The position numbers were made by a program, and so were the translations under genes. Below the pieces are notes generated by a model. The model saw nothing but the letters and a program-made list of their open reading frames with translations. It was not told the origin of the DNA and made no database searches. 64,000 bases of DNA. Origin: Bispira polyomma (Eukaryota). Shown here in pieces: positions 1 through 40,172 of the stretch (its first letter is position 1; the number at the start of each line of letters is the position of its first letter). The DNA is taken from positions 7,378,001 through 7,442,000 of the forward strand of contig OZ287751.1 of the NCBI GenBank assembly GCA_965649765.1, in the 5' to 3' direction.

Positions 1-64
1 CGCATTTGAAACATGTAGCTAATTTAGCCTCAGTGTGGATCAAAATCAAATACAGGGTCATTAC

Positions 65-77
65 CTGATTTGTGCAT
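65..77 (-). CDS. Possible 13-nt microexon of the nested gene (D-AQI-R/S)
   Basis: - strand: taatctag|ATGCACAAATCAG|gtaatg; good donor, weak pyrimidine tract. Open frame after the 8-nt exon; abuts the 33-bp tandem array. Confidence 0.35.
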
Positions 78-346
78 CTAGATTAACTATGTCTTAGATC
101 TCCCTCAATACTAGATTGACTATGTCTTAGATTTGCCATAATACTAAATTGACTATGTCTTAGATTTCCTCAATACTAGATTGACTATGTCTTAGATTTC
201 CCTCAATACTAGATTGACTATGTCTTAGATTTCACTCAATACTAGATTGACTATGTCTAAGATTGCCATAGTACTAGATTGACTATGACTTAGATTTCCC
301 TCAATACTAGATTGACTATGTCTTGGATTTCCCTCAATACTAGATT
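78..346. repeat. Minisatellite, ~32-33-bp unit, ~8 copies
   Basis: Repeated tagattgactatgtcttagatttccctcaatac. Confidence 0.95.
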
Positions 347-750
347 ATACTATACTCTCCCAAATCTCTACAACCACACTCCCAAATGTATCTTTTCCTC
401 TTATTTTATACAGAAGTATGTCCCCTATTTTATGACCCTTCTATTATATGAACAAAATCTTGTTCTCCCAACATGTTCTGATAAGAGAGTTTTTACTGTA
501 AATATAACCTATATTTCAAATATTCACTTTTATGTGCACATTGCTGTATTTGTCTGTTTGTTCAATATTATTGTGTTTCAATTATTTATGAATGTTCTTT
601 TATCCAAATGAAATACTGGGATAATAGATGTCCTTTGTGCAGTAATAAAAAATGTAGAAAATAACCCAATAGTTTTTATTGTTTAGTTTCACACAATATT
701 TCATCCCTATTTATACATTCTCAAACATTTCTTTGACATGATACTGTTAC

Positions 751-758
751 CTTTCCAT
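751..758 (-). CDS. 8-nt microexon of the nested gene (R-WK-D)
   Basis: - strand: aagTGCttttacag|ATGGAAAG|gtaaca, separated from the 32-nt exon by an 84-nt intron; keeps the frame open. Confidence 0.5.
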
Positions 759-842
759 CTGTAAAAGCACTTTTGATTGTTTTTGTAACACTATCAACAT
801 AGCAAATATTACTTATGATATTATTAAGGTTGATAATATTAC

Positions 843-874
843 CTGAAACGGTGGAGTGACACAATATTTTTATC
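843..874 (-). CDS. 32-nt exon of the nested gene (DKNIVSLHRF-R)
   Basis: - strand: ctcac..ctctctgttctcctgccag|GATAAAAATATTGTGTCACTCCACCGTTTCAG|gtaata; open in phase 0, matching the 6352 donor. Confidence 0.65.
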
Positions 875-2381
875 CTGGCAGGAGAACAGAGAGTGAGTAT
901 TCCAACTGATTAATTATGATTGAAAAATAATTTTCAGTTAAAAACAGAAATAATGTGATGCCAAATAGAGTAATGTTGTCGGAGTTGTATTTTAAAGAGC
1001 TGTGGCCTGTCCTTGTAACAGAAGTTAGTCTGGGCTCATATTGTTCATGTTAACTCATTTAACTGAAACTGAACTTAGAATGTAACTCAAGTCATCAAAT
1101 CTCTGTCTATAATACCAATATTTAATATATAATTACATATCTTTTGTTAATTGAATTATCACAATTTTTTGCATAAATCATTTCAAGTTTTGAGCAATTC
1201 AACATGAAGTTAGGTGTAAGTCTGAATATAAGCTTTTAAATTATTTGGAAAATATCAATTGTGGTTTCAACCACGTTCCATTTGCTTTAAAGTCAGATTT
1301 CAACCCAGTTTTCAACCCACTATCTCTCTCTATAGGTGTCACCTTTTACCAACTCTAATCTCTAACAGCCCTGAGGGAGGGTTTTCTAACACCCATGTCA
1401 CTATCGTTTTATGACAGTCCCTGGCTAACAGTTTGATCCATGCCTTTAACGCTATATGACATGGCAGTTTTCCCAACTCCCCCCTCCTTCCTCCTCCTCT
1501 GACTTTCAAACACAGAGGCTGGAGAAAATTCCTGGGCTTTGATAAATGTGTGCAATTACTTCAGTGTTGCTAGCCCTTGTCAGACAGAAGCTCCTAAACA
1601 CAGCATTGCTAGACCTGTCACACAAGGAATAAATGTCCCAGTTGATTTCAAGGTGACCTTGGACACCACCCCGAGTCCTTCAAATACTGAGAATCGTTTA
1701 GCCTCTGCCGCAAAATCTTTAATCCATTTTCCCGGGAGTTTTTTTTAAGGGTGTTGTAAGTCTCTATTAGCTTTAGAGTAGGGGATTTTTGGATAATAGA
1801 CTAAGTGTTATGGCTACAAATGTATACAGGATCCCTAAGTCATCCCTTTAATGATTCAGTAAACACAAGTATCGCTCATTTTCCTTTTTTTATGTAAGAA
1901 AATCTGACACATTAATAGTGATTGGTTAATTCAGCTCACAGTTTAAGGCACTAACATTTCATGCTCTTTATTTCCTACTTTTTAAGATTTATCGGCTCAA
2001 AAACTGAAGACTTACAGACCTATAAACTTTTGATTCCATGCTGAAGATATCTTAAAACTGCTTCTGTAATTTATGGTCACATAGCTATTTAGTATTCAAT
2101 TAAATTGTTGCATTTACAATGTACTTGTATGTATATTCACAGATAATTTCTAAGCCTTTGAACCCTTGTGTTTTAGTGTCTCAACGTCTGCTCAGTTAGA
2201 TTTTACTTGTTGATTTCTCAAATTGTTGAAGAATGCTTCTCTACGAGACGTTAAGTCCCAGTTGTGTCATGCTGGTTGTGTGTCCCTAAAACTGGAGCAA
2301 GTCATTAATTCACCCCAATTCCACTTGCTGTGTAAAGCCCCACTGGATGTCAGTGTGGGAGGTTATTCAAAATTTTTAATT

Positions 2382-2533
2382 ACAGTAGAACCTCTATTAT
2401 CCAAACATTTATTATCAGAAATATCCCATTTTATAAAGTCATTTATTTGATTTCATAATGCTAAACAATGCCACTTATTTTATGAATCATGAAGTCTTGC
2501 TTTTTGAAAACAATCAGATTGAGGTTCTACTGT
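2382..2533. mobile_element. Tc1/mariner (pogo/Tigger-like) MITE, representative of more than 15 copies
   Basis: ta-cagtagaacctctattatcc ... gaggttctactg-ta (TA TSD). Other copies or halves at ~400-499, 3291-3472, 4971-5147, 10020-10097, 16677-16845, 17198-18550, 22314, 30229-30400, 33100, 41520-41608, 46903-47046, 48238, 49930, 55250 and 56138. Confidence 0.85.
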
Positions 2534-4466
2534 AATGACTGTATTGTGTCTCAAGAGCCACATTTAGCTTAAGTTATTAAACGTAATGCCATGCGTAAAT
2601 TCAAATACGGTTATACCACATGGAAAGGTTTTCCTATTAGTGGAATTAATGTAGGCATGTTGTCACATTAGAACTTTTAGTGAGGAATTCAAATATTTTT
2701 TATTGCATACAAATACACATGTTCACATATTTTGAGAATATTTTGGGTTCAAGTTTGAGACTGTTGATAAATACTTGTCCTGGTCCCTTTTGATTGAATA
2801 AAAAATTAAAAAAAAATTTAAATAGACAATAGCTGTAAGGTATTGTAATAAAAATGCCTTTCCATATGTTTTCAAAGTCACTTTAAAGGCAAGCAGATTA
2901 GCTTTCCTACACCTGATTTTTGACTTGTGTAAAGTGTTTAATATACAAATAACTAAAGTTTTAACCCTAAATAAAATTCTTTTGATCTTCTTTTCTAGTG
3001 TGAAAGTGTTGGTATCCCTTTGTCAAATTTGTAGTTATGTGTCAGCAACTACTTTTTATGTACTGAGACCAAAATCTGTAAAAGGGGAAGATTGTAGTTA
3101 TTCAGCCCTACAACTAATTAGATCTGCAAACAACACGTAAATATTTCAACTGTATAAAATTGAATCAAATCAGCTATTAAAACCTTTAGATATAATACCT
3201 GTTTGACACCTTATGGACTAGAATGTAGTGTGAGCAATATGGAAACTTATAAACGTATAAATAAGACTAGACACAAAAAAAAGAATTTACCGTAGAACCT
3301 CTATTATCCAAACATGTTGGGAGAGAATGATTTGTTTACATAATAAAAGGTTCATAAAATAAAAGAAGCCTCTTAGTACAGTTTTAGAAAATATAGATCT
3401 TGGAGAGTGGAAATAAGTTCATAAAATCAAATATTTGGATAATACAAGCTAGAATAATAGAGGTTCTACTGTGCTTAAAATAAGAAGAAATATGCATTGA
3501 AAATACATCAGAAAGTTGGTTTAATTCTGTGACAAGATAGTTTTGTTCAATTAAAGAACCTTTGTGGATATTTAGTTACTCATTTGTTCTTTCATGTTAG
3601 AAAATCAAACAGAAATAGTACTCATTTTCTGATTGGTATTCTTTAACTCCATTAGAACTTCACAGAGTTATTGTTAGGTCTCCTTGCACATTTCTGCTGA
3701 GATAGTAATACACTTTTACTATCACACTGGCCTTGCCAAAAGCTTAAATTTCTTCAAAATAAACATCCATTTAATTCTCTATCAAGTATTCTTCATATTA
3801 ATGTGAAATCTTTGTAGCTTAAATATCGAAATACAAAAATCTTCCAGGTGCCCTTATTTTTAAAAGTGGCAAACCTAAACTTGAGTACCATATGTATGAA
3901 TTTCCTTATTAATGGGAGTAACCTAAGCAAGTTACCACTCATTTAAGATAGCCTTTTAATAAGTTAAAAACTCAATTTGTAGTCGGATTTTAAATATCTT
4001 TCTTTTGTATATCAAAAAACATCAGTACATATTTTGACATATTTGGAAGTTTAAGTTTAACACCTTGAATAAATACAAGCCCTAGTTAAATTTTTTGATA
4101 AATTTTTGAAAAATCTAATCTAATCTAGTCGTACTTTTATAGCGCTTAATCTTTGTACAACAAATTCTAAGGCGCAACAAACCCAAAACGTTAATCGAAA
4201 AAATGCAATATGTACTTAATTTGTTTCAAATGTAGCCAGGCTTTCTCCTTTTCTCATACATTTGTAGCCATCAAAGCATTTAGGCTAGTCATACACTCCG
4301 TATGTAAGCAGAACCTTCAGGAAAATGGCTAGAGGTGGAGCAGATTTAGAGAAAAACCCATTAGCTTTGCTGATAAACCGAGGTGATTGGAATACCTCTG
4401 GCTGTGATAATTCACACCGGATTTAGTTAAGTGTTCCTAACTTTTACATGCTGAAGTTTTTGAAAG

Positions 4467-4690
4467 GGGACTCTCGGTGGTGTAGTGGTAACATACGTGC
4501 TACTACCTCTGCCATCATGGGTTCGAACTTTAAACCTACAATGTATGTTGGGAAGTTGGGTAGTAGGCTTGCTGAAGTCTGGCGACTTGCACTGCAGAAA
4601 ACCCTGATCAACTGCTGTGTTCTGATTATCTTCACCAGTTTGTTGAGAGCAATGTAAACTGAAACTACTAAACCAGATACCAAAAGTTAA
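4467..4690 (+). mobile_element. tRNA-derived SINE (family also at 26130-26388(-), 56228-56460 and 62455-62690)
   Basis: A-box ggtggtgtagtggt and B-box gggttcgaac, followed by a conserved body gtgggaa(a)gttgg.ag...cttgc.ga...cttgatcaact shared among copies. Confidence 0.75.
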
Positions 4691-6351
4691 GGGATGTATA
4701 TAGAAATAGTCATGGTCAGTTTACTTTCGCAGGTGTGACCTTGCTGGCACGATTTGCTACTGCAACACCAGCCTCTTTCCCACTTGTTTTTGTCATTGAA
4801 AACCATTGACTTATTAGAAATGATTTGTTTACTGGTTTGGATTTTCTGAGCTGATGAGCTTAACTTTAATAAGGGTCACTTTCAAAAGTTTTACAGTTGG
4901 GGTGGACGGCTAAGGCAATGACCATATGTCCCCAGGCAGGAAATATTAAATTTGTCATAATAAATACAATACAGTAGACTCTATATAAGTAGAACCAGTG
5001 TAAGTCGAATTTAGGTAAAAGTGGAACCAGTTTTGAGGTTCCAATATCAGAAAATGCTGTATTTTTTGTAGGTGTAATTGGAAGTTAGCTATAACTAGAA
5101 CCAAATCCTGTAGAAAAAGCAGGTTCTAGTAATACAAAGTCCACTGTAGTAGTGTTTGAAATCGCTGGAGGTATTTGAGAGAAAGCAAATTATTATTCTT
5201 TAAACAATCTAGGGACCAGTATTAAAGTCCGCTACACATATGGATGTGTATGTTACCTATTTTAGATCTACGCAATTATGACATAATATCAGTCAGCTGC
5301 AGGGAAAAAGATATGAAAACAAAGTTATATTGTCACAGCTGTATTTCATGTTTGTTATAGGAAATGCACTTGTGCTAGCCAAGTAAAATGGAATGTTTAG
5401 TCTACCAGAGTTGATGTTCTTTGGCAAACAGAATGTTTCAAAGATTATTAGCTGTGTTTCATAGATATGGTCATTAAAAGATATTAAGATGTAGTCTAAT
5501 ATCATACAAACTAGCTATACACACAAAATTACAATTGTTGTTTTAACTAAGCATAAATACAGTGTTTTTCAATATACACCAAACAAGTAATGGTCATTTA
5601 GAGATTAGTAATTATAATACAGCTAAATATTTTAGAAATGTTCCCTGAGATTTAATTTAAATTTTCAATGTGATGAAACTAATTTTCTTATGTTTTCATA
5701 TAGTAAGTTTGATTATTAAAAAAATGCCTCAGACAAAAAAATTATTATCAATGTATGGTGTGATTAATGTTCAGTTGCATAAAAATAAGAAAGGTGAAGA
5801 AAATGGTACAACCTAATTTCAATTTTAAAGTTCTCAAATAAGAAAGTACCAATTACTGTTGAGTATTTATTTATATGTAAATTATACCCATGCATCCAAA
5901 AAATATAATAACCCATTCTCTCTGAAAAATTATATATTTTTTTCGTAACAGTGTTATATTATAAACAAATATTGTAGTTGTGTTCTATTCACATTGCAAC
6001 AAATGCGGATTTTCAAAGTTGTTGGCTCTTATAAATTAACAATGTCATTCACACTGCCCCAAATCAGAATATTGATATAGAAATGTGGTAGGGATCAAAA
6101 GTTGCAGGAATATTTTTTCTAATTTTCACAAAAATTTTTGAAAGAGATACTTAAAGCAAGTGGAAATAAAACATCATCTAAAACATAAGAAAAAGTGACA
6201 CATGTACGCATGATTTGGACGAATATTTAAGCCCTGTATACACTGCAAATGTCTACAATTTGGTTTCGTGTGTATTGCCAAATTCCTTGATAAGTCTGCA
6301 TTCGATGCAATGTGAATGGAACATAAAACAGCTTCAGGAGTTACCTCTTAC

Positions 6352-6477
6352 CTCAATCGACACCACAGTTAAGTCATTGTCTTTGAAAGGCCTGCGATTC
6401 CTCTTCGCCTGCACTTCCAGAATGACGATAATTAGAACCAACAGGGCAAATCCTATTTCTAGCTTTCCCCTAAGCAT
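6352..6477 (-). CDS. First coding part of a nested antisense gene encoding a predicted secreted or signal-anchored protein (MLRGKLEIGFALLVLIIVILEVQAKRNRRPFKDNDLTVVSIE); whole exon about 6603-6352
   Basis: On the - strand: acceptor acttttgcag| at 6604, start context tcaacATG, basic-hydrophobic-VQA signal-peptide pattern, and strong donor GAG|gtaaga in phase 0. Family not recognised. Confidence 0.72.
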
Positions 6478-7759
6478 GTTGACTATCAGTTAGCTTAAAT
6501 CCACAAAAAAAGAATCCCAAAAACTGATAGAATTTGCTCCAGCTGCTGCTACATTTATTTAATTAGCATCTTTCTGTTTTTTGGTTTTCTGTTCTCTCAA
6601 TTGCTGCAAAAGTATAGTTTTTAAAAATCAATAAAGAAGTTCTGTATAAGCAGATGCCTCCATTAGGAGTTAATTATTTTTAGCTAACCTAGCTTTAATC
6701 ATTTAGGATACTAGTAAACATTAAGTAACAGTACAAAGTTAACCTTGTATTGCTATTTAAAAACTGAAACGATAGCTAATAGTGACAAATATCAATTCCA
6801 GTGAACTTCTCAAAATGTGTTTAAAAGATACATAGTGACATTTTATTCAAGCTAAAAATGTCTACTTCACTTATTACAGTATTTTGTGTGTTCTTCCCAT
6901 AATTTATAGAATCTCTGTGTAATACTTTGATCTCTAATTGCTGTACCAAAAATATCACCAACAACACCATACACCCCTCTTCCCTTCCTCTCCTTATGTG
7001 AACTTTGATTGGATTCTTACAGAACAATGACTTCAGGCCTTTTCTGTGTATGTGTGGCTATTTCGCAGTTGCCCTTTCATTTCCTGGGTAATGCGCTCTC
7101 TCCTCAAAATAACACACAATGCACTCGCCCCAATCTGATAATATGCAACACATTTTACTCTTGACTTGCCCCTGTGTATACGTTTCCTATCTATTTTTCT
7201 CACTCACTGAACGAGCGTGTTTGTGTGTGTGTCAATATACCGGTATATGCGTCTATCCATCTCCTAATAAAGTAAATGTCATTCCTCCCAGATTGTCCAT
7301 TATTTTTAGCCCTGCACACAAAGAGTCCTGGAGTCCATGAACATATAGATTTACTGCTTTTAAAAATTATGTCAGCTCCAATAACACAAATTATAAATAC
7401 ATGTGACACTTAATACATTAAATGTGTTTACACTTTACAGAATCTGAAATCTGATCCATTCTCCGTTAAACATTTATACCTAATGTGGGATTTGAACACA
7501 TTCTCCTTGAAAAATTTATACCCAAAGTTGGTTGTGGGTTTTAGTAATTTGAACCACTTGGCAAATGTCCTCAGTTTTCTATATGTTGGACTTAATAACC
7601 CTTTTTTAAACGCCCTACTCTAGGTTTCAATTATCCATAGTAGTTTACAAAATGATGTGTCTCTGCTTTTCTCCCCTCCACTTTTCTGACTTTGGTGTTG
7701 TATATTGATGTAAGCACACAATTTGTTATTAAATATACAATGATTGTACATATCTACAC

Positions 7760-8350
7760 CAAGAACTGGTGGTAAGTGTGGTAAATGTCAGCAATGTGTC
7801 AGATCCCTGTCCCTTTTGTTATAAGGGAGCTATTCCTATTATGGTCAGAGCACCACACTGTGTGAACTACATACACAGTCCACTGTGTCTAATAATTCAA
7901 TTGGCTGGAGAACCCTCACTGAGAAGTCCCTGCTCTGTGCTACGATCTTTAATAAACCCACCCCGCCAGTAGAATAAAGGAGCTTCTTCAAGTCCACTCG
8001 ATCCTTATAAATACCAACAGTGAGTAGAGGAGGAGGGAGCAGCCTCAATTCCTCCACTCCTGGTCACTTGACTTTCAACTGCTCCAAATCTACAGACCAA
8101 GGGAGGAAGACAGAGAGAAATGCTTGCAGTAAACATAGCACAGAGTTCAGTCTCTCCCTCTCAGTAGATAAAGCTGTCGGAAATGACTGATTTGCCAGTA
8201 ACTGTGCATTAATTGTGTCGACCAATGGCATCACTCGACAGGAAACTTGTGATTAAAGGCAAGTTTTAAAGGGAGAGTGGTTTGGGTCGGGCTATATTTG
8301 GGAGACAGAAACAGAATTGGAATTGACACAGGCACGCAGGAAGTTTCTAC
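7760..8350. promoter_or_regulatory. Promoter/enhancer-like unique island
   Basis: Repeat-free and less AT-rich; attgg (~7900), GC-box cccaccccgcc (~7957), tataaata (~8006), ccaat (~8222), and ETS-like caggaa sites. Motif-level evidence only. Confidence 0.3.
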
Positions 8351-10191
8351 TTTTTGTTCTTGCAGTAGTTTTGTTCTTTTGTTTGATGTAGTTGATATTA
8401 TAGTGAACCTCTGGGTTTATTTTGATTTACAAATCACTGGCCTGTTGGTCAGAGCTAGGGGAAGTAGATAACTTGTAACTTTGACAATTTGAGTTATGTA
8501 TATATATATACATGGAGGTTTGTTTCAATCAGCAGCTTGTTAACTTTATCCTGTCTGAATATAAGCTTCGGCATTGAAGAATTTAACTGTTTTTTGGTAC
8601 AGTTTTTTTGTAGGCATTCATTTGATATGGACTGGAGTGAGTTATTGGGGTGTTAAGAGGAGGACAAGTTATATATATATATATATTACATCCAAGATTA
8701 GAAATAAGCATAATATGTGATATATATATTGTTTTTCCAAGACCCAAGGACAGTTTTCTCCTTCATATTTTTTACATTTTTGTGGGAAATTACTTTTATA
8801 CTTTTCAGACTAAATATACTAACTCTGACTCCAGTACTTTTATACCATTTAATCAGTTAATACTTGTGTATAGACTAGACTCACTGTAACTAGAATTGCT
8901 ATAATGAAGTCAAATTTCTCTACAACTAAAACCAATTCTCTGGTGCAAACATTCAACAATACCAGTTTAAGATTTGGTGTAAGTAGATTCGACTTTACAC
9001 TGTATATATGATGGCCCAAATGATGGATAACACTGTAAAAAGTCTGGGAGCCAATGCACTTTGCCGGTACCAATTTTGTTTGTTCATAAACATTTTGCAA
9101 GAAAGAATATAGCTTACAAGTGAAATTTTTGAAGCAAATATTACATAAATAATATCAAATTAAGCATTGATAAATAGTTTATAATAGTTAGCCAAAAATA
9201 GTTTATAATAGTTTAGCAAAAGCCCCCAAACCCCTTGTTAAAATTTTAAAGTGGAGTTAGTGACATCATATTGGTACCGGCAAACTACATTGTACCCAAA
9301 GTCTGGTCTGTGTTTTTATTGTCACCCCGGAGAGACTGGAAATCAGACTACCTTTGAAAACAGTTGATATTATTGCCATTGTTTGTCTATAATTGTAATA
9401 AGTGCTCTGGGAGAAGGACATCATACTTGGAGACAAAAAAACACAAAATGAGGGGGGGCGGGGAGGTCATCAGCAGGGGACTAATAAACTAAGCTAGCTT
9501 TACATGTAAGGGTTGAATTACATGTTATAACCCTCTATTATGCAAGCAAGGAGGGGCAAAATTAACTCTTTTAATCACAAGAAGAGATCATAACATAAGT
9601 CCAGACAATTTAGAATGACACAAAATTAAAAGCTAATTTTGAGAAAAAAAAAATGAATCAAGTTCATAATTTCAAAATAGAAGTTTGGATAAAAGACGCT
9701 GTTGTTTTTTCTGTAAATTAGGAAGTATGTACAAATATTCCCAGCAGTTGCATTTTTAAAACTCTGCCGAATTCCCCCCCACTTATTTTTATAGGGAATT
9801 TTGTAGTCCTACTAAGACATTTCCTTTTCAAAAAATAACCCTTTTGAGAGAAAATGCTGCCCATTGAGTTTTAACTGTAATCTGTTCAACAAAGAGAGCA
9901 GAAATTTTGCCTTTTCTAAAAACATTGATTCTCTAATAAGTTGTATAGTTTTAACTGTATCGCTTAATGACAAGGAGTTTTTGTCTTCATTTGAGCTGGA
10001 CGAGATTATGCAGAACTGCCTCTTTTATTTCTGTGTACCTTCTATTATACGAACATCTTGCACACCAAACATGTTTGGATAGTAGAGGTTCTACTGTAGC
10101 TTGATTGGCTTCACTACCGTAGTCTGATATTAGTGTAATACTTTGTCATCAATGTCTTATTGTCATTAATGTCCTGTACTGTGTCTTCTCT

Positions 10192-12742
10192 TGTATTGTC
10201 CATGTATTGTAATGCAGTATTGTCCATGTATTGTAATGCAGTATTGTCCATGTATTGTAATGCAGTATTGTCCATGTATTGTAATGCAGTATTGTCCATG
10301 TATTGTGATGCAGTATTGTATCCTCTTGAGGCTCTTGTATTAGTATGTATTGTACATTGTATTGTAATGCAGTATTATCCATGTATTGTAATGCAGTATT
10401 ATCCATGTATTGTAATGCAGTATTGTCCATGTATTGTAATGCAGTATTGTCCATGTTTTGTGATGCAGTATTGTCCATGTATTGTGATGCAGTGTTGTCC
10501 ATGTATTGTGATGCAGTGTTGTCCATGTAGTGTAATGCAGTGTTGTCCATGTAGTGTAATGCAGTGTTGTCCATGTATTGTGATGCAGTATTGTCCATGT
10601 ATTGTAATGGATTGTCAATGTATTGTGATGCAGTATTGTCCATGTATTGTAATGCAGTATTGTCCATGTAGTATAATTCAGTATTGTCCATGTATTGTGA
10701 TGCAGTATTGTCCATGTATTGTGATGCAGTATTGTGTATGTAGTATAATGCAGTATTGTCCATGTATTGTGATGCAGTATTGTCCATGTATTGTAATGGA
10801 TTGTCAATGTATTGTGATGTAGTATTATCCATGTATTGTAATGCAGTATTGTCCATGTAGTATAATTCAGTATTGTCCATGTATTGTGATGCAGTATTGT
10901 CCATGTATTGTAATGCAGTATTGTCCATGTATTGTGATGCAGTATTGTCCATGTATTGTAATGCAGTATTATCCATGTATTGTAATGTAGTATTGTCCAT
11001 GTATTGTGATGCAGTATTGTCCATGTATTGTGATGCAGTATTGTCCATGTATTATAATGCAATATTGTCCATGTATTGTAATACAGTATTGTCCATATAG
11101 TATAATGCGGTATTGTCCATGTATTGTAATGCAGTATTGTCCATGTTTTGTGATGCAGTATTGTCCATGTATTGTGATGCAGTGTTGTCCATGTATTGTG
11201 ATGCAGTGTTGTCCATGTAGTGTAATGCAGTGTTGTCCATGTATTGTGATGCAGTATTGTCCATGTATTGTAATGGATTGTCAATGTATTGTGATGCAGT
11301 ATTGTCCATGTATTGTAATGCAGTATTGTCCATGTAGTATAATTCAGTATTGTCCATGTATTGTGATGCAGTATTGTCCATGTATTGTGATGCAGTATTG
11401 TGTATGTATTGTGATGCAGTATTGTCCATGTATTGTAATGGATTGTCAATGTATTGTGATGCAGTATTATCCATGTATTGTAATGCAGTATTGTCCATGT
11501 AGTATAATTCAGTAGTGTCCATGTATTGTGATGCAGTATTATCCATGTATTGTAATGCAGTATTGTGTATGTAGTATAATGCAGTATTGTCCATGTATTG
11601 TGATGCAGTATTGTCCATGTATTGTAATGCAGTATTATCCATGTATTGTAATGTAGTATTGTCCATGTATTGTGATGTAGTATTGTCCATGTATTATAAT
11701 GCAATATTGTCCATGTATTGTAATACAGTATTGTCCATATAGTATAATGCAGTATTGTCCATGTATTGTAATGCAGTATTGTCCATGTATTGTGATGCAG
11801 TATTGTCCATGTATTGTGATGCAGTATTGTCCATATATTGTGATGCAGTATTGTCCATGTATTGTAATGCAGTATTGTCCATGTGGTATAATGCAGTATT
11901 GTCCATGTGGTATAATGCAGTATTGTCCATATAGTATAATGCAGTATTGTCCATGTATTGTGATGCAGTATTGTCCATGTATTGTAATGCAGTATTGTCC
12001 ATGTATTGTGATGCAGTATTGTCCATATAGTATAATGCAGTATTGTCCATGTATTGTAATGCAGTATTGTCCATGTAGTATAATGCAGTGTTGTCCATGT
12101 ATTGTAATGCAGTATTGTCCATGTATTGTGATGCAGTATTGTCCATGTATTGTAATGCAGTATTATCCATGTATTGTAATACAGTATTGTCCATGTATTG
12201 TGATGCAGTATTGTCCATGTATTGTAATGCAGTGTTGTCCATGTATTGTGATGCAGTATTGTCCATGTAGTATAATGCAGTATTGTCCATGTATTATAAT
12301 GCAGTATTGTACATGTATTGTGATGCAGTATTGTCCATGTATTATAATGCAGTATTGTCCATGTAGTATAATGCAGTATTGTCCATGTATTATAATGCAG
12401 TATTGTACATGTATTGTGATGCAGTATTGTCCATGTATTGTAATGCAGTATTGTCCATGTAGTATAATGCAGTATTGTCCATGTATTATGATGCAGTGTT
12501 GTCCATGTATTGTAATGCTTTATTGTCCATGTAGTATAATGCAGTATTGTCTATGTATTGTAATGCAGTATTGTCCATGTAGTATAATGCAGTATTGTCC
12601 ATGTATTGTAATGCAGTATTGTACATGTATTGTAATGCAGTATTGTCCATATAGTATAATGCAGTATTGTCCATGTATTGTAATGCAGTATTGTCCATGT
12701 ATTGTGATGCAGTATTGTCCATGTATTGTGATACAGTAATTG
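10192..12742. repeat. 24-bp tandem satellite, ~105 copies, with variant units and higher-order duplication
   Basis: Consensus gtattgtccatgtattgtaatgca; explains all the MDNTALQY/CIVMQYCP ORFs. Confidence 0.98.
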
Positions 12743-12745
12743 TAC

Positions 12746-12944
12746 CTTATATCTACACTATAGTCTGTAGACATTCTTCAGACGGGTGGACTCATAGCAC
12801 TTGTACTGACTTGCCCTCTATTATTTCATTTTGGCAGCAACCAGGACATGACACGTTCATCCTTTTACAACTGTCTTCAGTTCGTTTTATAACAGCATAC
12901 ACTTTCAGCATCTCAGATAAACTGGCCAAACCCATCTGTGAAGA
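12746..12944 (-). other. Leader exon of the nested gene carrying most of the 59-aa ORF (SSQMGLASLSEMLKVYAVIKRTEDSCKRMNVSCPGCCQNEIIEGKSVQVL*, stop 12794-12792) and the start of a short uORF (ATG 12774)
   Basis: - strand acceptor ttattctttatag| (alternative cacag| at 12936, in frame) and donor AAG|gtacaa. Unique, less AT-rich sequence; the 24-bp satellite starts exactly at the donor. Confidence 0.55.
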
Positions 12945-13715
12945 CTATAAAGAATAATCATTGTCTGGCGTCATTGCCAAATGCCTTTTTAGGTAGATTA
13001 TTTCTCTAATAAAATTAGATGAGATAAAAATAAAAGATCCTATTAACCTTAACGGACCAAGAGAGATAAGAAAAAAAAGTATTTTTGGAACTACAAATTT
13101 TTCTCAAGATAAACGGGAAATTGGTTAAACAGACTACCATTTAAATTGGGTTTAACTCTCGTATGAAGTCTTGTTCAACTGGGAGAAATTCTTTGCTGTT
13201 GTAATTGATTATGCATATAATTAAAACAACTTAATTATATTTGTTTTAGAATATCTTTTGAAAGCTGTAAATCACAATGTCCTTTGATAAAGGCTTTTAG
13301 GAAGCAGAGATATGTACACAGATTGACACAGTATGAGGCCATGTATGGGTACTTCTGATTTACCAGTGTATACAGTGTGTTGGAAAGATACCCAGGGCTT
13401 CAAGACAGTCATACCCTAGATTTTCCCTCAGTGAAAGGTGTACAATTGAGTTCATAAAATTGATTACTCTGATAATAGAATACAGATAACATTGCAGCAT
13501 ACACATATACTTGACTGTTGTGTGTTCCGTCTCTGTGGTTCCACTGTTCAGGAAGTGGTTCTTGTTAACATTATCTTGCTGCTGCTAAAATTTGGCCTCT
13601 TTTTGAAAAACAAGATGGCCGCCGTGAAAAGCTCTTCAATAATTATTATAATCAATGTTGATACTATTGCAACTTGTATCACCAAATTTTAACGATATGT
13701 TAACTGCTATCATAC

Positions 13716-13796
13716 CTTCCTCCTGCTGAACTTTGGCCTCATTCAGAAAGACAAAATGGTTGTCATAGCGGAATTGAATATTTTTACTTTCACATT
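13716..13796 (-). other. Upstream (leader) exon of the nested gene, 81 nt; contains the start of the 59-aa ORF (ATG 13742, MRPKFSRRK)
   Basis: - strand: gttttactcctag| ... AAG|gtatga; canonical splice signals at both ends. Confidence 0.55.
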
Positions 13797-14284: not shown

Positions 14285-15283
14285 ACAAATATCTGGCTAT
14301 CTATCTAGTATTCACAGTCATACTAAGACAACTATTCTTAAATTCTTGTTTGTCTCAAATTGAATAAAAATTATCTGCTACAAAGTATGTTGTGATGACA
14401 ATTAAAGAGTGCAATCTAATTTTCTATTTCCCCAGGTCTGGTATTCACAAAGAGTCTTATTCTTAACTCTTTGTATCAACCATTTTGATTAGCTGAAAAT
14501 GTTGGTTCAAGAATCTGAGTGACTGACTTTATCAAAATTCAAAGAATGTTTGTGAATATGACCCTATATCAGCTTCAGAGTTTTCAGCGGGCATTTGACT
14601 TGTGGCTTTGCATTACCACAGGTTTAATCTGATCTGGATTTCTGAACATAAGTTTTGACAAATTTAATTGAAGATATTGGTTAGTACTCTGACAAATCAG
14701 TGTAAATAACTTTACACAGAAAGTGTCCCAGTATTAATATTTGCAGTATCTGAATTGTATATATTTGAATCAAGTAGTTCCTTTAACTTAGGAACAAAAT
14801 TATAATCTTTGATTGATTGATTGTGCTTTGACAAAGTAACTTTCATATCTGTTTGCTAGATGGTGATTAAGTAGGTTATACATGGGCTAAAGAAATAAAT
14901 GGGAACCACTTATTTGAGAAGGCTGCAAATGGTCAACCCATCCCTCCCAGGCTAATGACACACTTGGGTATAGAGTTGTATTAAAAACAATTTCCCCAAA
15001 AACTATTTGTCATCAGCATAAAGGTGGCATTTTATGGGTTGAATAGCTTAGGAAGCAATTGCAAGTTAGGGCAGTAGAAGAAGGGCCTTGTGGGAAATCC
15101 CCAGGGATACTATCCCATGGTCACTTGTGATATTGGGCTGTAGTTCCAAATTTGATAGATTGCTGCAATCTTTCAACAACAAAAAAGCTATGGACAAATC
15201 CTACTCATTTATTTATACAATGTGACAAAAACTCTGCTGCTGTATTTATGTAGATATTTGGTATCTGCAGGAGAATATTTAAC

Positions 15284-18067: not shown

Positions 18068-18552
18068 ATTCAGATAACAGAAGTTTAGATAACAGAGGTT
18101 CAGATAATGGATGTTTAGATAACAGAGGTTCACTTAACAGAGGTTCAGATAACAGAAGTTTAGATAACAGAAATTTAGATAATAGATGTTTAGATAACAG
18201 AGGTTCAGATAATAGAGGTTTAGATAATAGAGGTTTAGATAACAGAGGTTCATATAATAGAGGTTCAGATAATAGAGGTTTAGATAATAGAGGTTCAGAT
18301 AATAGAGGTTCAGATAATAGAGGTTTGGATAACAGAAGTTCAGATAACAGAAGTTTAGATAATAGAGGTTCAGATAATAGAGGTTCAGATAATGGAGGTT
18401 CAGATAATAGACGTTTGAATAACAGAAGTTTTGATAATAGAGGTTCAGATAATAGAGGTTCAGATAATGGAGGTTCAGATAATAGACGTTTGGATAACAG
18501 AAGTTCAGATAATAGACGTTTGGTAACAGAAGTTCAGATAATAGAGGTTTAA
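18068..18552. repeat. 15-bp minisatellite, ~32 copies, derived from a MITE terminus
   Basis: Repeated gataatagaggttca/gataacagaagttta, the same motif as the MITE end ggataatagaggttctactg. Confidence 0.93.
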
Positions 18553-26585: not shown

Positions 26586-26848
26586 GTTTTTCTGTCTATT
26601 TAGGTCAGTCTGGTGTGTGTACCCAGTGCTAAACACAACAAGTTTAACCAGATGGTGCCTTTAGTTCACGCATGTGTTGTGGTTTTCTGTGTATTTAGGT
26701 CAGTCTGTGTGTGTACCCAGTGCCAAACACAACTAGTTTAACCAGTTGGTGCCTTTACTTCATGCGTCTTCTGTGTTTTTCTGTGTTTTTAGGTCAGTCA
26801 GATGCGTGTAGACAGTGCCAAACACAACAAGTTTAACCAGATGGTGTG
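26586..26848 (+). repeat. Triplicated 3' splice site plus exon start of EXOC2 (~94-95-bp period)
   Basis: Three copies of ttttctgt...ttag|gtcagtc...cagtgc(t/c)aaacacaac(a/t)agtttaaccag(a/t)tggtg, with AGs at 26602, 26697 and 26791. Confidence 0.9.
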
Positions 26849-27004
26849 GGAGGTCATTGACCTGTTCTCTAAGCTGGTGAGGGCCGCCTTCCTGCCTCAT
26901 TCCTTACAGAGCATGGACGCGGGTGTGAGGGAGAAATATGGGGTATGGGGGGAGAATAGGGACTCACCCACTGGATGGCTGCCAATCTGTGTCAGATGTG
27001 TCAG
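26793..27004 (+). CDS. EXOC2: EXOC2/Sec5 internal exon (VSQMRVDSAKHNKFNQMVWEVIDLFSKLVRAAFLPHSLQSMDAGVREKYGVWGENRDSPTGWLPICVRCV-R)
   Basis: Acceptor tttttag|GTC and donor AG|gtatga; 212 nt, open frame, ends in phase 2. Resembles the vertebrate EXOC2 segment KMIQEVMHSLVKLTRGALLP...YGGW...GQWLAHAIQTVR (recalled, not searched). An in-frame alternative acceptor at 26801 is possible. Confidence 0.9.
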
Positions 27005-27554
27005 GTATGAAAGCTCAGGCTAAAGCCTGGGTAATAGACAGATTATACTATAGTCTACTGCAATTTGTGGTCAAGTCTCATCAGTAATATATATGTAGTT
27101 TAATGAGCTAAAGCCTGTGTAAGAGGCAGATTGTACTACTGCAGTTTGTGATTAGTAAGTAGTCTAATTAGTAATAGTTTAATGAGCTAATGCTTAAGTT
27201 AGAGGCAGATTGTGCTTTCTGCAATTTGAATTTTAGGCAGATTGTACTACTGCAGTTTGTGGGAAAGTTTAATTAGTTATTGCCTATGTTAAAGGATAAT
27301 TGTACAACTGCAGTTTGTGATTCATTTTAATGAGGTAATGTCTGTTTTTAGACTGTACTGCTGTAGTATGGCTCTGAACAGATTGTGTACTGTCAAATTG
27401 GATTTCTACCATGACATGTATATTGTGATACCAAAACCTAACTTGTGATGTTGGGCCTGCGTATAACTAGAATTTATTTTGTAAACAAGTGTCACATTCC
27501 CTCCCAGGATATCTTGTATAACATACTCTAACCGTTACTGTATATCTGTTCCAG

Positions 27555-38208: not shown

Positions 38209-38304
38209 ATGTAATGATTCATATACTTGAAGTGTTCTCTCAATACGTATTTTAAAACATAAAATACATACAGCAATGTGAAAAATTGTAGCAAAAATGG
38301 TAAA

Positions 38305-40172
38305 GATTCCTTGCAGGCAGCTTTGAATACCATAGAAATATTTGGCTCCATGTCCGGATTGAAAATGAATACGTCAAAGACCAAAATAGTATGGATCGGG
38401 AGGAAAAAACACAGTAAAGATAAGTTACAAGTAAGCTGTAAACTTGAGTGGGGCATCACAGAGTTCAATTTACTGGGTATATTATTTGATGTGGATCTAC
38501 ACAAGATGATACATAAAAACTTTGAAAGTGCTATTTTGCAGGCCAAAAATATACTTACTAATTGAAAAAAATGCTATCTTTCACCTTTGGGAAAAATAAC
38601 TGTGATTAAAACATTTATATTCTCAAAATTTGATCACCTTTTTGTATCATTACCTAATCCTACTGACGCTGTAATAAAATCAATATTTGATATGGTGTAT
38701 GAATTTTTATGGAATGGTAAACCAGATAAGGTAAGCCGAAAACAAATATGCAAGGAATATTTGGATGGAGGGTTAAAAATGATTGACCTTGACAAATTTT
38801 TAAAATCACTCAATTCAACCTGGATCAGACGCTTGGTAAGAGAACCCGAATCGCCATGGGCATATCTTACCAACCATAAATTGAATATTTCTCATAAACT
38901 GACCATTTATGGTCCAGCCTGGTGTGAAAAGCTGATTACTAAAACAGCAAACCCCTTTTGGAACGATGTTTTGAAGTCATGGCAAGCTGTGTCCGAATCA
39001 TGCCCAATCGAGTCGGATCAAGATATTTTAAACAGTCCATTATGGTATAATAAAAACATCAGTCATCATACACTTTTTTACCCAAGATGGTATGAAAACG
39101 GAATAATTTTCATAGGTGATCTATTCAGCGAAAATGGCACTTTCTATTCAATGAATGAACTAAAGATGTTGTATAATCTAGACTATATTAATCCTCTAGA
39201 ATATTATAGAATTAGATCACTCACTAAATTTTTCATTAAAAAGAATAGACCGACTTTGAATCTAGTAAAAAAATAGGACCTTTCATGCCATCACACGTAA
39301 AAATTTTATTTAAGAGTCAAAAAGGTGCACATGATCTGTATGAAATAATAAATAAGACTCCATTCCAACCAAAAATGAAGATAAAATGGAGTAAAGAACT
39401 AAACAAGGAATTAGAAGATATTGTTTGGAGAAAAATTTTCACTGTGTTTTGGATTTACAAGTGATGCCTCACTTACATGGTTACAATATAGAATTTTATT
39501 TAGAATAATTGGTGTTAGGAAACATTTAACTACAATACATAAAGATGATTCAAATATTTGTAGATTATGTTCAAATGATGAAGAAACCATTGTACATCTA
39601 TTTTTCTACTGTGAGAAGTAGAAAGATTTGTGGAATTTAATTTCTAACTGGGTTAGAATTAAACTAGGTATAACACTACTGTTTAATATAGAGCAAGTTA
39701 TTTTTGGCTATCTAAATATGGATGAAAATTATAAACCAGTTAATTTACTAATTATGCATGTAAACAAATATATATTTCGATGTGCAGTAACTTATAGAAA
39801 GATCAATATTTATTTTTTTCAAAAGAAGTTCAAGGAGATTTATTATGAACAAATAACACTAATCAAATTAAAGGATCCAAAAGTAAAATTTGTTAAATAC
39901 TTGGATACATGGGAGCCTTTATTTAGGGATATCTAACGTTTAAAAGAAGACATTGAAAAAAGGACACAAAAATGAAGTTTACTCTATACTGTATACTGTG
40001 TTTTTAATGAAATTATTAGTAAATGTGTAGTGTTAAAGTAATAAAGTAATGTAATATGGTAAAGAGTCAATCTCGTGTACTACACATGTTTCTGTTTTTT
40101 TACTACATATTTTGTAATACATATGAAAAGGAGAATGTATAATAAAAAAAAAATTAAAATTAAAAAAAAAAA
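38305..40172 (+). mobile_element. 5'-truncated, decayed non-LTR retrotransposon (Tx1/L1-clade-like ORF2 C-terminus) with poly(A) tail
   Basis: Broken ORFs 38278-39936 contain RT C-terminal motifs (FGSMSGLKMN.SKT, LGI, GGLKMIDL, W...GI..IGDL) and a zinc-binding CRLC...ETIVHLFFYC motif; stops and frameshifts present. AATAAA plus poly(A) at 40141; TSD aaaaatggtaaa at 38293-38304 and 40173-40184. Confidence 0.9.

What the first reader, a model, noticed from the sequence alone, without database searches (positions are those of the whole stretch)
65..13796. Unannotated nested antisense gene in the large EXOC2 intron, invisible to the ORF track
Seen: on the - strand a chain of canonical GT-AG exons (13796-13716, 12944-12746, 6603-6352, 874-843, 758-751, possibly 77-65) with consistent phases. 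The main ORF starts in a caacATG context at 6477 and reads MLRGKLEIGFALLVLIIVILEVQA/KRNRRPFKDNDLTVVSIE-DKNIVSLHRF-RWK-DAQI..., a signal peptide followed by a basic mature N-terminus. It continues beyond the window start. Inference: a secreted or type-II membrane protein transcribed opposite to EXOC2. I cannot name the family.
Basis: partly seen in the sequence, partly recalled or inferred. Interest (0 to 1): 0.8.

Follow-up and report, generated by a model that had tools for sequence, protein, structure and literature searches.

The report
Channel-less glutamate-receptor binding protein gene
Inside an intron of a housekeeping gene, this animal (probably an annelid worm) carries a gene for only the ligand-gripping part of a glutamate receptor, with no ion channel and probably a lipid anchor; it belongs to a large annelid family for which I found no description, and its pocket looks rebuilt for a small acid other than glutamate.

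Summary
Exon 6477-6352 (signal peptide) most likely splices directly to two exons beyond the window start (G000:C4:7370946-7370764 and 7369137-7368439), giving a 335-aa frame inside one ~72-kb EXOC2 intron. The product is an iGluR ligand-binding domain with S1 and S2 joined in one exon, no M1-M3 channel helices and a GPI-type hydrophobic tail. The three micro-exons together shift the frame, and no relative has an insert there; exon 13796-13716 is a dispersed repeat. Four paralogues lie in this genome and about 97 channel-less relatives (50% clusters) in public data. Those with names are annelid (Capitella, Helobdella, Owenia, Ridgeia), and Capitella and Owenia share both intron positions. In the gene's 47-member clade the carboxylate arginine is kept (46/47) while the amino-binding glutamate becomes proline (43/47), which argues against glutamate as ligand. 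Best reading: a surface-tethered binding or decoy protein, an AChBP-like idea for iGluRs. No reads were available; ligand, anchor and expression here are untested. The scan noted paralogues of this family earlier on other DNA of this genome.

The parts
6352..6477 (-). First coding exon (A): signal peptide (about residues 1-24), short basic spacer, first beta-strand of the ligand-binding domain; ends in phase 0
   Evidence: best of only two phase-0 donors preceded by the family's strand-1 pattern among 781 GT-purine sites upstream of exon B; register matches 10 full-length relatives
6478..6603 (-). Probable 5' untranslated part of exon A, with an acceptor at 6603
   Evidence: canonical acceptor; not confirmed by reads
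1..6351 (-). In-window part of the 13.4-kb intron after exon A. The remaining coding exons lie beyond the window start: exon B (G000:C4:7370764-7370946; L003:2764-2946; 61 aa, first part of S1, phase 0 at both ends) and exon C (G000:C4:7368439-7369137; L003:439-1137; 232 aa plus stop: end of S1, short linker in place of M1-M3, whole S2, spacer, terminal hydrophobic tail)
   Evidence: exon B: PF10613 E 1.2e-13, GluD1/GluK1 structures, splice sites; exon C: GluA2 S1S2 constructs in one stretch, E 2.4e-35, model and fold search, tail hydropathy 2.73 at the very end; intron length
12746..12944 (-).
   Evidence: unique sequence, canonical ends, several upstream ATGs
13716..13796 (-).
   Evidence: at least 43 matches genome-wide at 73-91% identity
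65..874 (-).
   Evidence: frame test; no insert in relatives; 77-65 abuts tandem repeat 78-346
26793..27005 (+). EXOC2 (Sec5) exon that closes the ~72-kb host intron, which opens after G000:C4:7332346
   Evidence: phase-0 donor and acceptor; flanking exons hit PF15469; this exon itself assigned by position and recalled similarity, no Pfam hit of its own

Best explanation
An intact three-coding-exon gene makes a 335-aa precursor. The signal peptide sends it into the secretory pathway (inferred from hydropathy). The mature chain folds as the two-lobed ligand-binding domain of an AMPA/kainate-type receptor (shown by homology and models). S1 and S2 are joined by a short linker, so no channel can form (shown in the DNA). 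The hydrophobic tail is probably swapped for a GPI anchor (inferred). The tethered domain closes on a small carboxylate that lacks an alpha-amino group, such as a hydrophobic organic acid, and buffers, scavenges or presents it at the cell surface, or is shed to do so (inferred from pocket residues). Nesting in EXOC2 is incidental.
For: Open 335-aa frame with GC3 0.55-0.70 against 0.33 intron GC. One-stretch match to engineered GluA2 S1S2. Four paralogues with the same last exon. About 97 natural channel-less relatives; 76 of 95 with a scorable tail end in a hydrophobic stretch. Full-length relatives of 300-373 aa, including a 346-aa uninterrupted frame on a 1.6-kb sequencing-run contig. Same two phase-0 introns in Capitella and Owenia. 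Model of relative P0025: pLDDT 87, TM 0.91-0.94 over the best AMPA LBD targets. Pocket in the 47-member clade: R485 kept 46/47, E705 to P 43/47, T480 mostly Y/F, S654/T655 mostly V/I/L. Acid-sensing insect IRs keep the same arginine (PMC8575457).
Against: No reads for this locus, so the A-to-B junction and expression are inferred. No signal-peptide or GPI predictor was run. No binding data. This copy is a long branch with no close orthologue (best 44-45% identity) and has His at 480 and Thr at 654, both rare in the clade.
Confidence: 0.6

Rival explanations
1. Same gene and anchor, but the protein works by docking onto full-length iGluRs or IRs through the ligand-domain dimer surface, as an auxiliary, co-receptor or inhibitory subunit; ligand binding is secondary.
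For: The whole domain fold and its terminal cysteines are kept; ligand-domain dimers are standard in iGluRs (established knowledge); the genome has many channel-bearing iGluR/IR genes.
Against: The pocket is conserved in a rebuilt form across the clade, which points to selection on a ligand. The dimer surface was not analysed.
Confidence: 0.2
2. It binds glutamate or another amino acid and buffers transmitter, as AChBP does for acetylcholine.
For: AMPA/kainate ancestry and R485 kept; other channel-less subgroups keep T480 and an acidic residue at 705.
Against: This protein has H480, I655 and P705; channel-bearing relatives have T, T/S and E/D there in over 90% of cases.
Confidence: 0.08
3. The tail is a retained single-pass helix (remnant of M4) or the protein is simply secreted, with no GPI anchor.
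For: The tail sits where M4 follows S2 in iGluRs; the model shows a helix at 214-230; a few relatives have weak tails.
Against: No residues follow the hydrophobic stretch, no charge in the last 15 residues, and a polar spacer with small residues precedes it.
Confidence: 0.1
4. This copy is silent or decaying, or the reader's micro-exon isoform is the main product.
For: No reads; the 32-nt candidate has strong splice sites; long branch.
Against: Intact frame, high GC3, conserved introns and family residues; the three micro-exons truncate the protein at 65 aa.
Confidence: 0.05

Closest known systems
AMPA/kainate/delta iGluR ligand-binding domain; engineered GluA2 S1S2 constructs (PDB 1FTK, 1FTJ)
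   Same: Same fold, about 35-37% identity over the modelled part, R485, C-terminal cysteine pair; aligns in one stretch.
   Different: Natural gene; no amino-terminal domain, no M1-M3; leader plus terminal hydrophobic tail; pocket rebuilt.
Acetylcholine-binding protein (AChBP) of molluscs and annelids
   Same: Concept: the ligand-binding part of a ligand-gated channel used without the pore (own knowledge).
   Different: Unrelated fold (pentameric Cys-loop family); soluble; binds the parent receptor's ligand.
Insect ionotropic receptors for acids (Ir75a, Ir75b, Ir84a)
   Same: iGluR-derived domain that keeps the carboxylate arginine and binds non-amino acids (PMC8575457).
   Different: IRs are channels with transmembrane helices and co-receptors.
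Vertebrate kainate-binding proteins (GLRK, GluR-U1)
   Same: Signal peptide followed almost directly by S1, no amino-terminal domain (hits; own knowledge).
   Different: They keep the channel domain PF00060.
Bacterial family-3 solute-binding proteins (PF00497)
   Same: Continuous two-lobed binding protein without a pore; PF00497 E 6.7e-10.
   Different: Much weaker match than to AMPA domains (one bacterial hit at E 7.6e-7); spliceosomal introns; animal iGluR motifs.

Membership tests
Ionotropic glutamate receptor (channel) | S1/S2 ligand-binding domain | tested here: met
Ionotropic glutamate receptor (channel) | M1-M3 helices with the SYTANLAAF motif between S1 and S2 (PF00060) | tested here: not met
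   S1 and S2 are contiguous in exon C; highest internal 19-residue hydropathy 1.08; no PF00060
Ionotropic glutamate receptor (channel) | Amino-terminal domain | tested here: not met
   leader runs into strand 1 in exon A and in full-length relatives
Ionotropic glutamate receptor (channel) | Amino-acid-binding set T480, R485, S654/T655, E705 | tested here: not met
   H, R, T/I, P
GPI-anchored protein | N-terminal signal peptide and terminal hydrophobic signal after a polar spacer, no internal helix | tested here: met
   hydropathy only; no dedicated predictor
GPI-anchored protein | Cleavage at an omega site and glycolipid attachment | not testable with these tools
   needs PI-PLC release or mass spectrometry
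AChBP | Cys-loop receptor extracellular fold, pentamer | tested here: not met
   fold is the iGluR ligand domain; analogy only
Annelid channel-less iGluR-domain family (unnamed) | S1-linker-S2-tail in one last exon, two phase-0 introns, R485 with P705/N686/I708 | tested here: met
   falls in a 47-member clade, local support 96 (FastTree)
Horizontally acquired bacterial solute-binding protein | Closer to bacterial proteins than to animal iGluRs | tested here: not met

The most novel reading that the evidence does not exclude
Annelids evolved a large family of GPI-tethered, pore-less iGluR ligand domains that act as extracellular binding proteins or co-receptors for non-amino-acid carboxylates (lipid or organic-acid signals or environmental cues), the iGluR counterpart of AChBP but with a changed ligand and possibly a partner channel.
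Probability: 0.45. Interest if true: 0.85.

Novelty: new variant of a known kind. Interest (0 to 1): 0.7.

Why it matters
The S1S2 fragment has been a laboratory construct for 25 years; here it is a natural, conserved gene family. A broad iGluR survey discarded sequences without the pore motif (PMC6307864), which may explain why the family went unremarked. If the proteins bind a ligand, they point to an unknown extracellular signal or scavenging step in annelids, and they offer small, probably well-folding domains for structure and ligand screens. The nesting in EXOC2 is ordinary by itself.

Tried and rejected
The joined spliced model was translated only locally to test the frame; it was not searched or folded. 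Exons were searched by reference, and a public full-length relative was folded instead. Word searches found only five last-exon fragments, which is why the large search was used. An out-of-frame duplicate acceptor 83 nt upstream of exon B leads to a stop and was rejected. A second strand-1-like donor at 14382 has a weak donor and no leader. Six paper searches for such a family found no description; the library lacks most subscription journals. P0101 looks like an engineered AMPA S1S2 construct and P0111 groups with channels; both were excluded from family counts. Conserved nesting in EXOC2 orthologues was not tested; the paralogues lie on other contigs and relative P0041 lies between Ras and WWC1 genes. 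The trees do not settle whether the pore was lost once or several times.

Full report
Location. The window is G000:C4:7378001-7442000 of a 1.04-Gb animal assembly. EXOC2 (Sec5, PF15469) exons lie on the + strand on both sides. One exon ends at C4:7332346 and the next one I found starts at window 26793; both ends are phase 0. The finding lies inside this ~72-kb interval. A small additional in-frame EXOC2 exon within it cannot be excluded.

Observation. I fetched 160 kb upstream of the window start and found a 239-codon open frame of 50% GC on the - strand at C4:7369158-7368442, and a second frame at C4:7370946-7370749. They hit PF00497 and PF10613. Splice sites give exon B (C4:7370946-7370764, 61 aa) and exon C (C4:7369137-7368439, 232 aa plus stop), all junctions in phase 0. 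Exon A (6477-6352) also ends in phase 0, and A, B and C give a 335-aa frame. GC at third codon positions is 0.55, 0.70 and 0.65 against 0.33 overall GC in the intron.

Micro-exons and upstream exons. All three micro-exons together stop the frame at 65 aa; each alone, and 32+8, also stop it. The pairs 32+13 and 8+13 keep the frame, but ten full-length relatives run from strand 1 straight into the EPY motif with no insert, in the same register as the end of exon A and the start of exon B. Capitella and Owenia have phase-0 introns at both of the same positions, and so does a third animal at the first. Thirteen candidates pass a crude splice score in this intron; the 32-nt one scores best, so a minor frame-shifting isoform is not excluded. 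Exon 13796-13716 is a dispersed repeat. Exon 12944-12746 is unique but unverified. An acceptor at 6603 suggests that some upstream non-coding exon exists.

What the protein is. Exon C aligns in one stretch with engineered GluA2 S1S2 constructs (E 2.4e-35). The end of S1 is followed by a short linker and then S2, so channel exons cannot lie between them. The model of exon C (pLDDT 75.9) matches AMPA ligand domains. A full-length relative, P0025 (44% identical to exon C), folds at pLDDT 87 and covers whole AMPA ligand domains, with TM 0.91-0.94 by target for the best matches. After the last cysteine come about 46 residues ending in an uncharged hydrophobic stretch at the very terminus. With the leader, this is the layout of a GPI-anchored protein; that step rests on hydropathy and established knowledge.

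Family. Four paralogues share the last-exon design (C2, C7 and two on C11). The ESM Atlas has a 147-member cluster without PF00060, commonest taxon Annelida. The large search returned many single-stretch matches; 99 were classed as channel-less, 97 after two exclusions (the count includes the five genes of this genome), and 76 of 95 with a scorable tail end in a hydrophobic stretch. Named members come from Capitella, Helobdella, Owenia, Ridgeia and Lamellibrachia, all as hypothetical proteins; one from a Siedleckia transcriptome is probably carry-over from its polychaete host (inference). P0025 is an uninterrupted 346-codon frame on a 1633-base sequencing-run contig, consistent with a spliced transcript. 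The host genome is therefore probably an annelid (inference). Most hits carry no taxon, so restriction to annelids is not shown.

Pocket. With GluA2 numbering (own knowledge, mapped through) this protein has P478, H480, R485, T654, I655, N686, P705, I708 and F732. In its 47-member clade R485 is kept in 46, position 705 is proline in 43, 686 is asparagine in 44, 708 is isoleucine in 45, 480 is mostly tyrosine or phenylalanine and 654/655 are mostly hydrophobic. Channel-bearing relatives keep T480 (43/46), E/D705 (45/46) and S/T at 654-655. The alpha-carboxyl anchor is kept and the alpha-amino and gamma-carboxyl contacts are gone. Acid-sensing insect IRs keep the equivalent arginine, proposed to bind the acid group (PMC8575457). 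Other channel-less subgroups, including paralogue C11:43258, mostly keep an acidic residue at 705 and may bind amino acids.

Mechanism. Shown: gene structure by homology, absence of a pore, fold, family, conserved rebuilt pocket. Inferred: expression of this copy, signal cleavage near residue 24, GPI attachment, ligand class and physiological role. I favour a tethered binding or scavenging protein for a hydrophobic carboxylate (0.6). The main rival is an auxiliary subunit for full-length receptors (0.2).

Comparison and novelty. It works, in concept, like AChBP, but it is not an AChBP, and it fails the membership test for iGluR channels. Six paper searches found no description. A major survey removed sequences lacking the pore motif (PMC6307864). 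Earlier notes of this scan describe paralogues elsewhere in the genome; I had reached the architecture before reading them, took the annelid and pocket leads from them, and tested both here. One note says at least seven such genes; I found five.

Limits. After one Pfam scan of exon A I kept letters of window 700-6650 out of search tools. The joined model was neither searched nor folded. Paralogue 5' exons could not be fetched.

Verdict. A real nested gene and a member of an apparently undescribed family of natural pore-less iGluR ligand domains; the micro-exon part of the finding is not supported. Interest 0.7; new variant of a known kind.

Noticed in passing
window 26586-26846 (+): A 94-bp tandem repeat made of degenerate copies of the EXOC2 acceptor and exon start at 26793; possible decoy acceptors.
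   Followed up: no
L003:2947-3029 (-), G000:C4:7370947-7371029: An 83-nt partial duplicate of the exon-B acceptor and first codons, out of frame and ending in a stop.
   Followed up: partly
G000:C4:7342153-7346564 (-), in L006: Retroelement with overlapping long frames (486, 683, 953 codons), reverse-transcriptase-like text and a weak tyrosine-recombinase hit, probably DIRS-like, in the same EXOC2 intron; a decayed similar copy at C4:7351100-7352935 (+).
   Followed up: partly
L003:1010-1040 (-), linker in exon C: The natural S1-S2 linker (KPTDGDPI) closely resembles the engineered linker of the GluA2 construct in PDB 1FTK (KPGTDGNPI); probably coincidence.
   Followed up: no
window 38278-39936 (+): Fragments that read like a LINE-type reverse-transcriptase region; no Pfam support for the piece scanned.
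   Followed up: partly
window 10193-12743 and 18069-18549: A 24-bp minisatellite of about 100 copies and a 15-bp array create long spurious open frames.
   Followed up: no
G000:C6:12289271-12795714: Cluster of about ten PF10613 hits, most in long open frames (about 520-710 codons), probably intron-poor ionotropic receptor genes.
   Followed up: no
L028-L030, L033 (G000:C1:99.52-99.62 Mb): Tandem cluster of four channel-bearing iGluR-like genes; the copy in L033 has its large exon split across frames.
   Followed up: no
proteins P0114, P0127, P0137: Channel-less relatives with long C-terminal extensions (486-675 aa) form their own well-supported branch.
   Followed up: no
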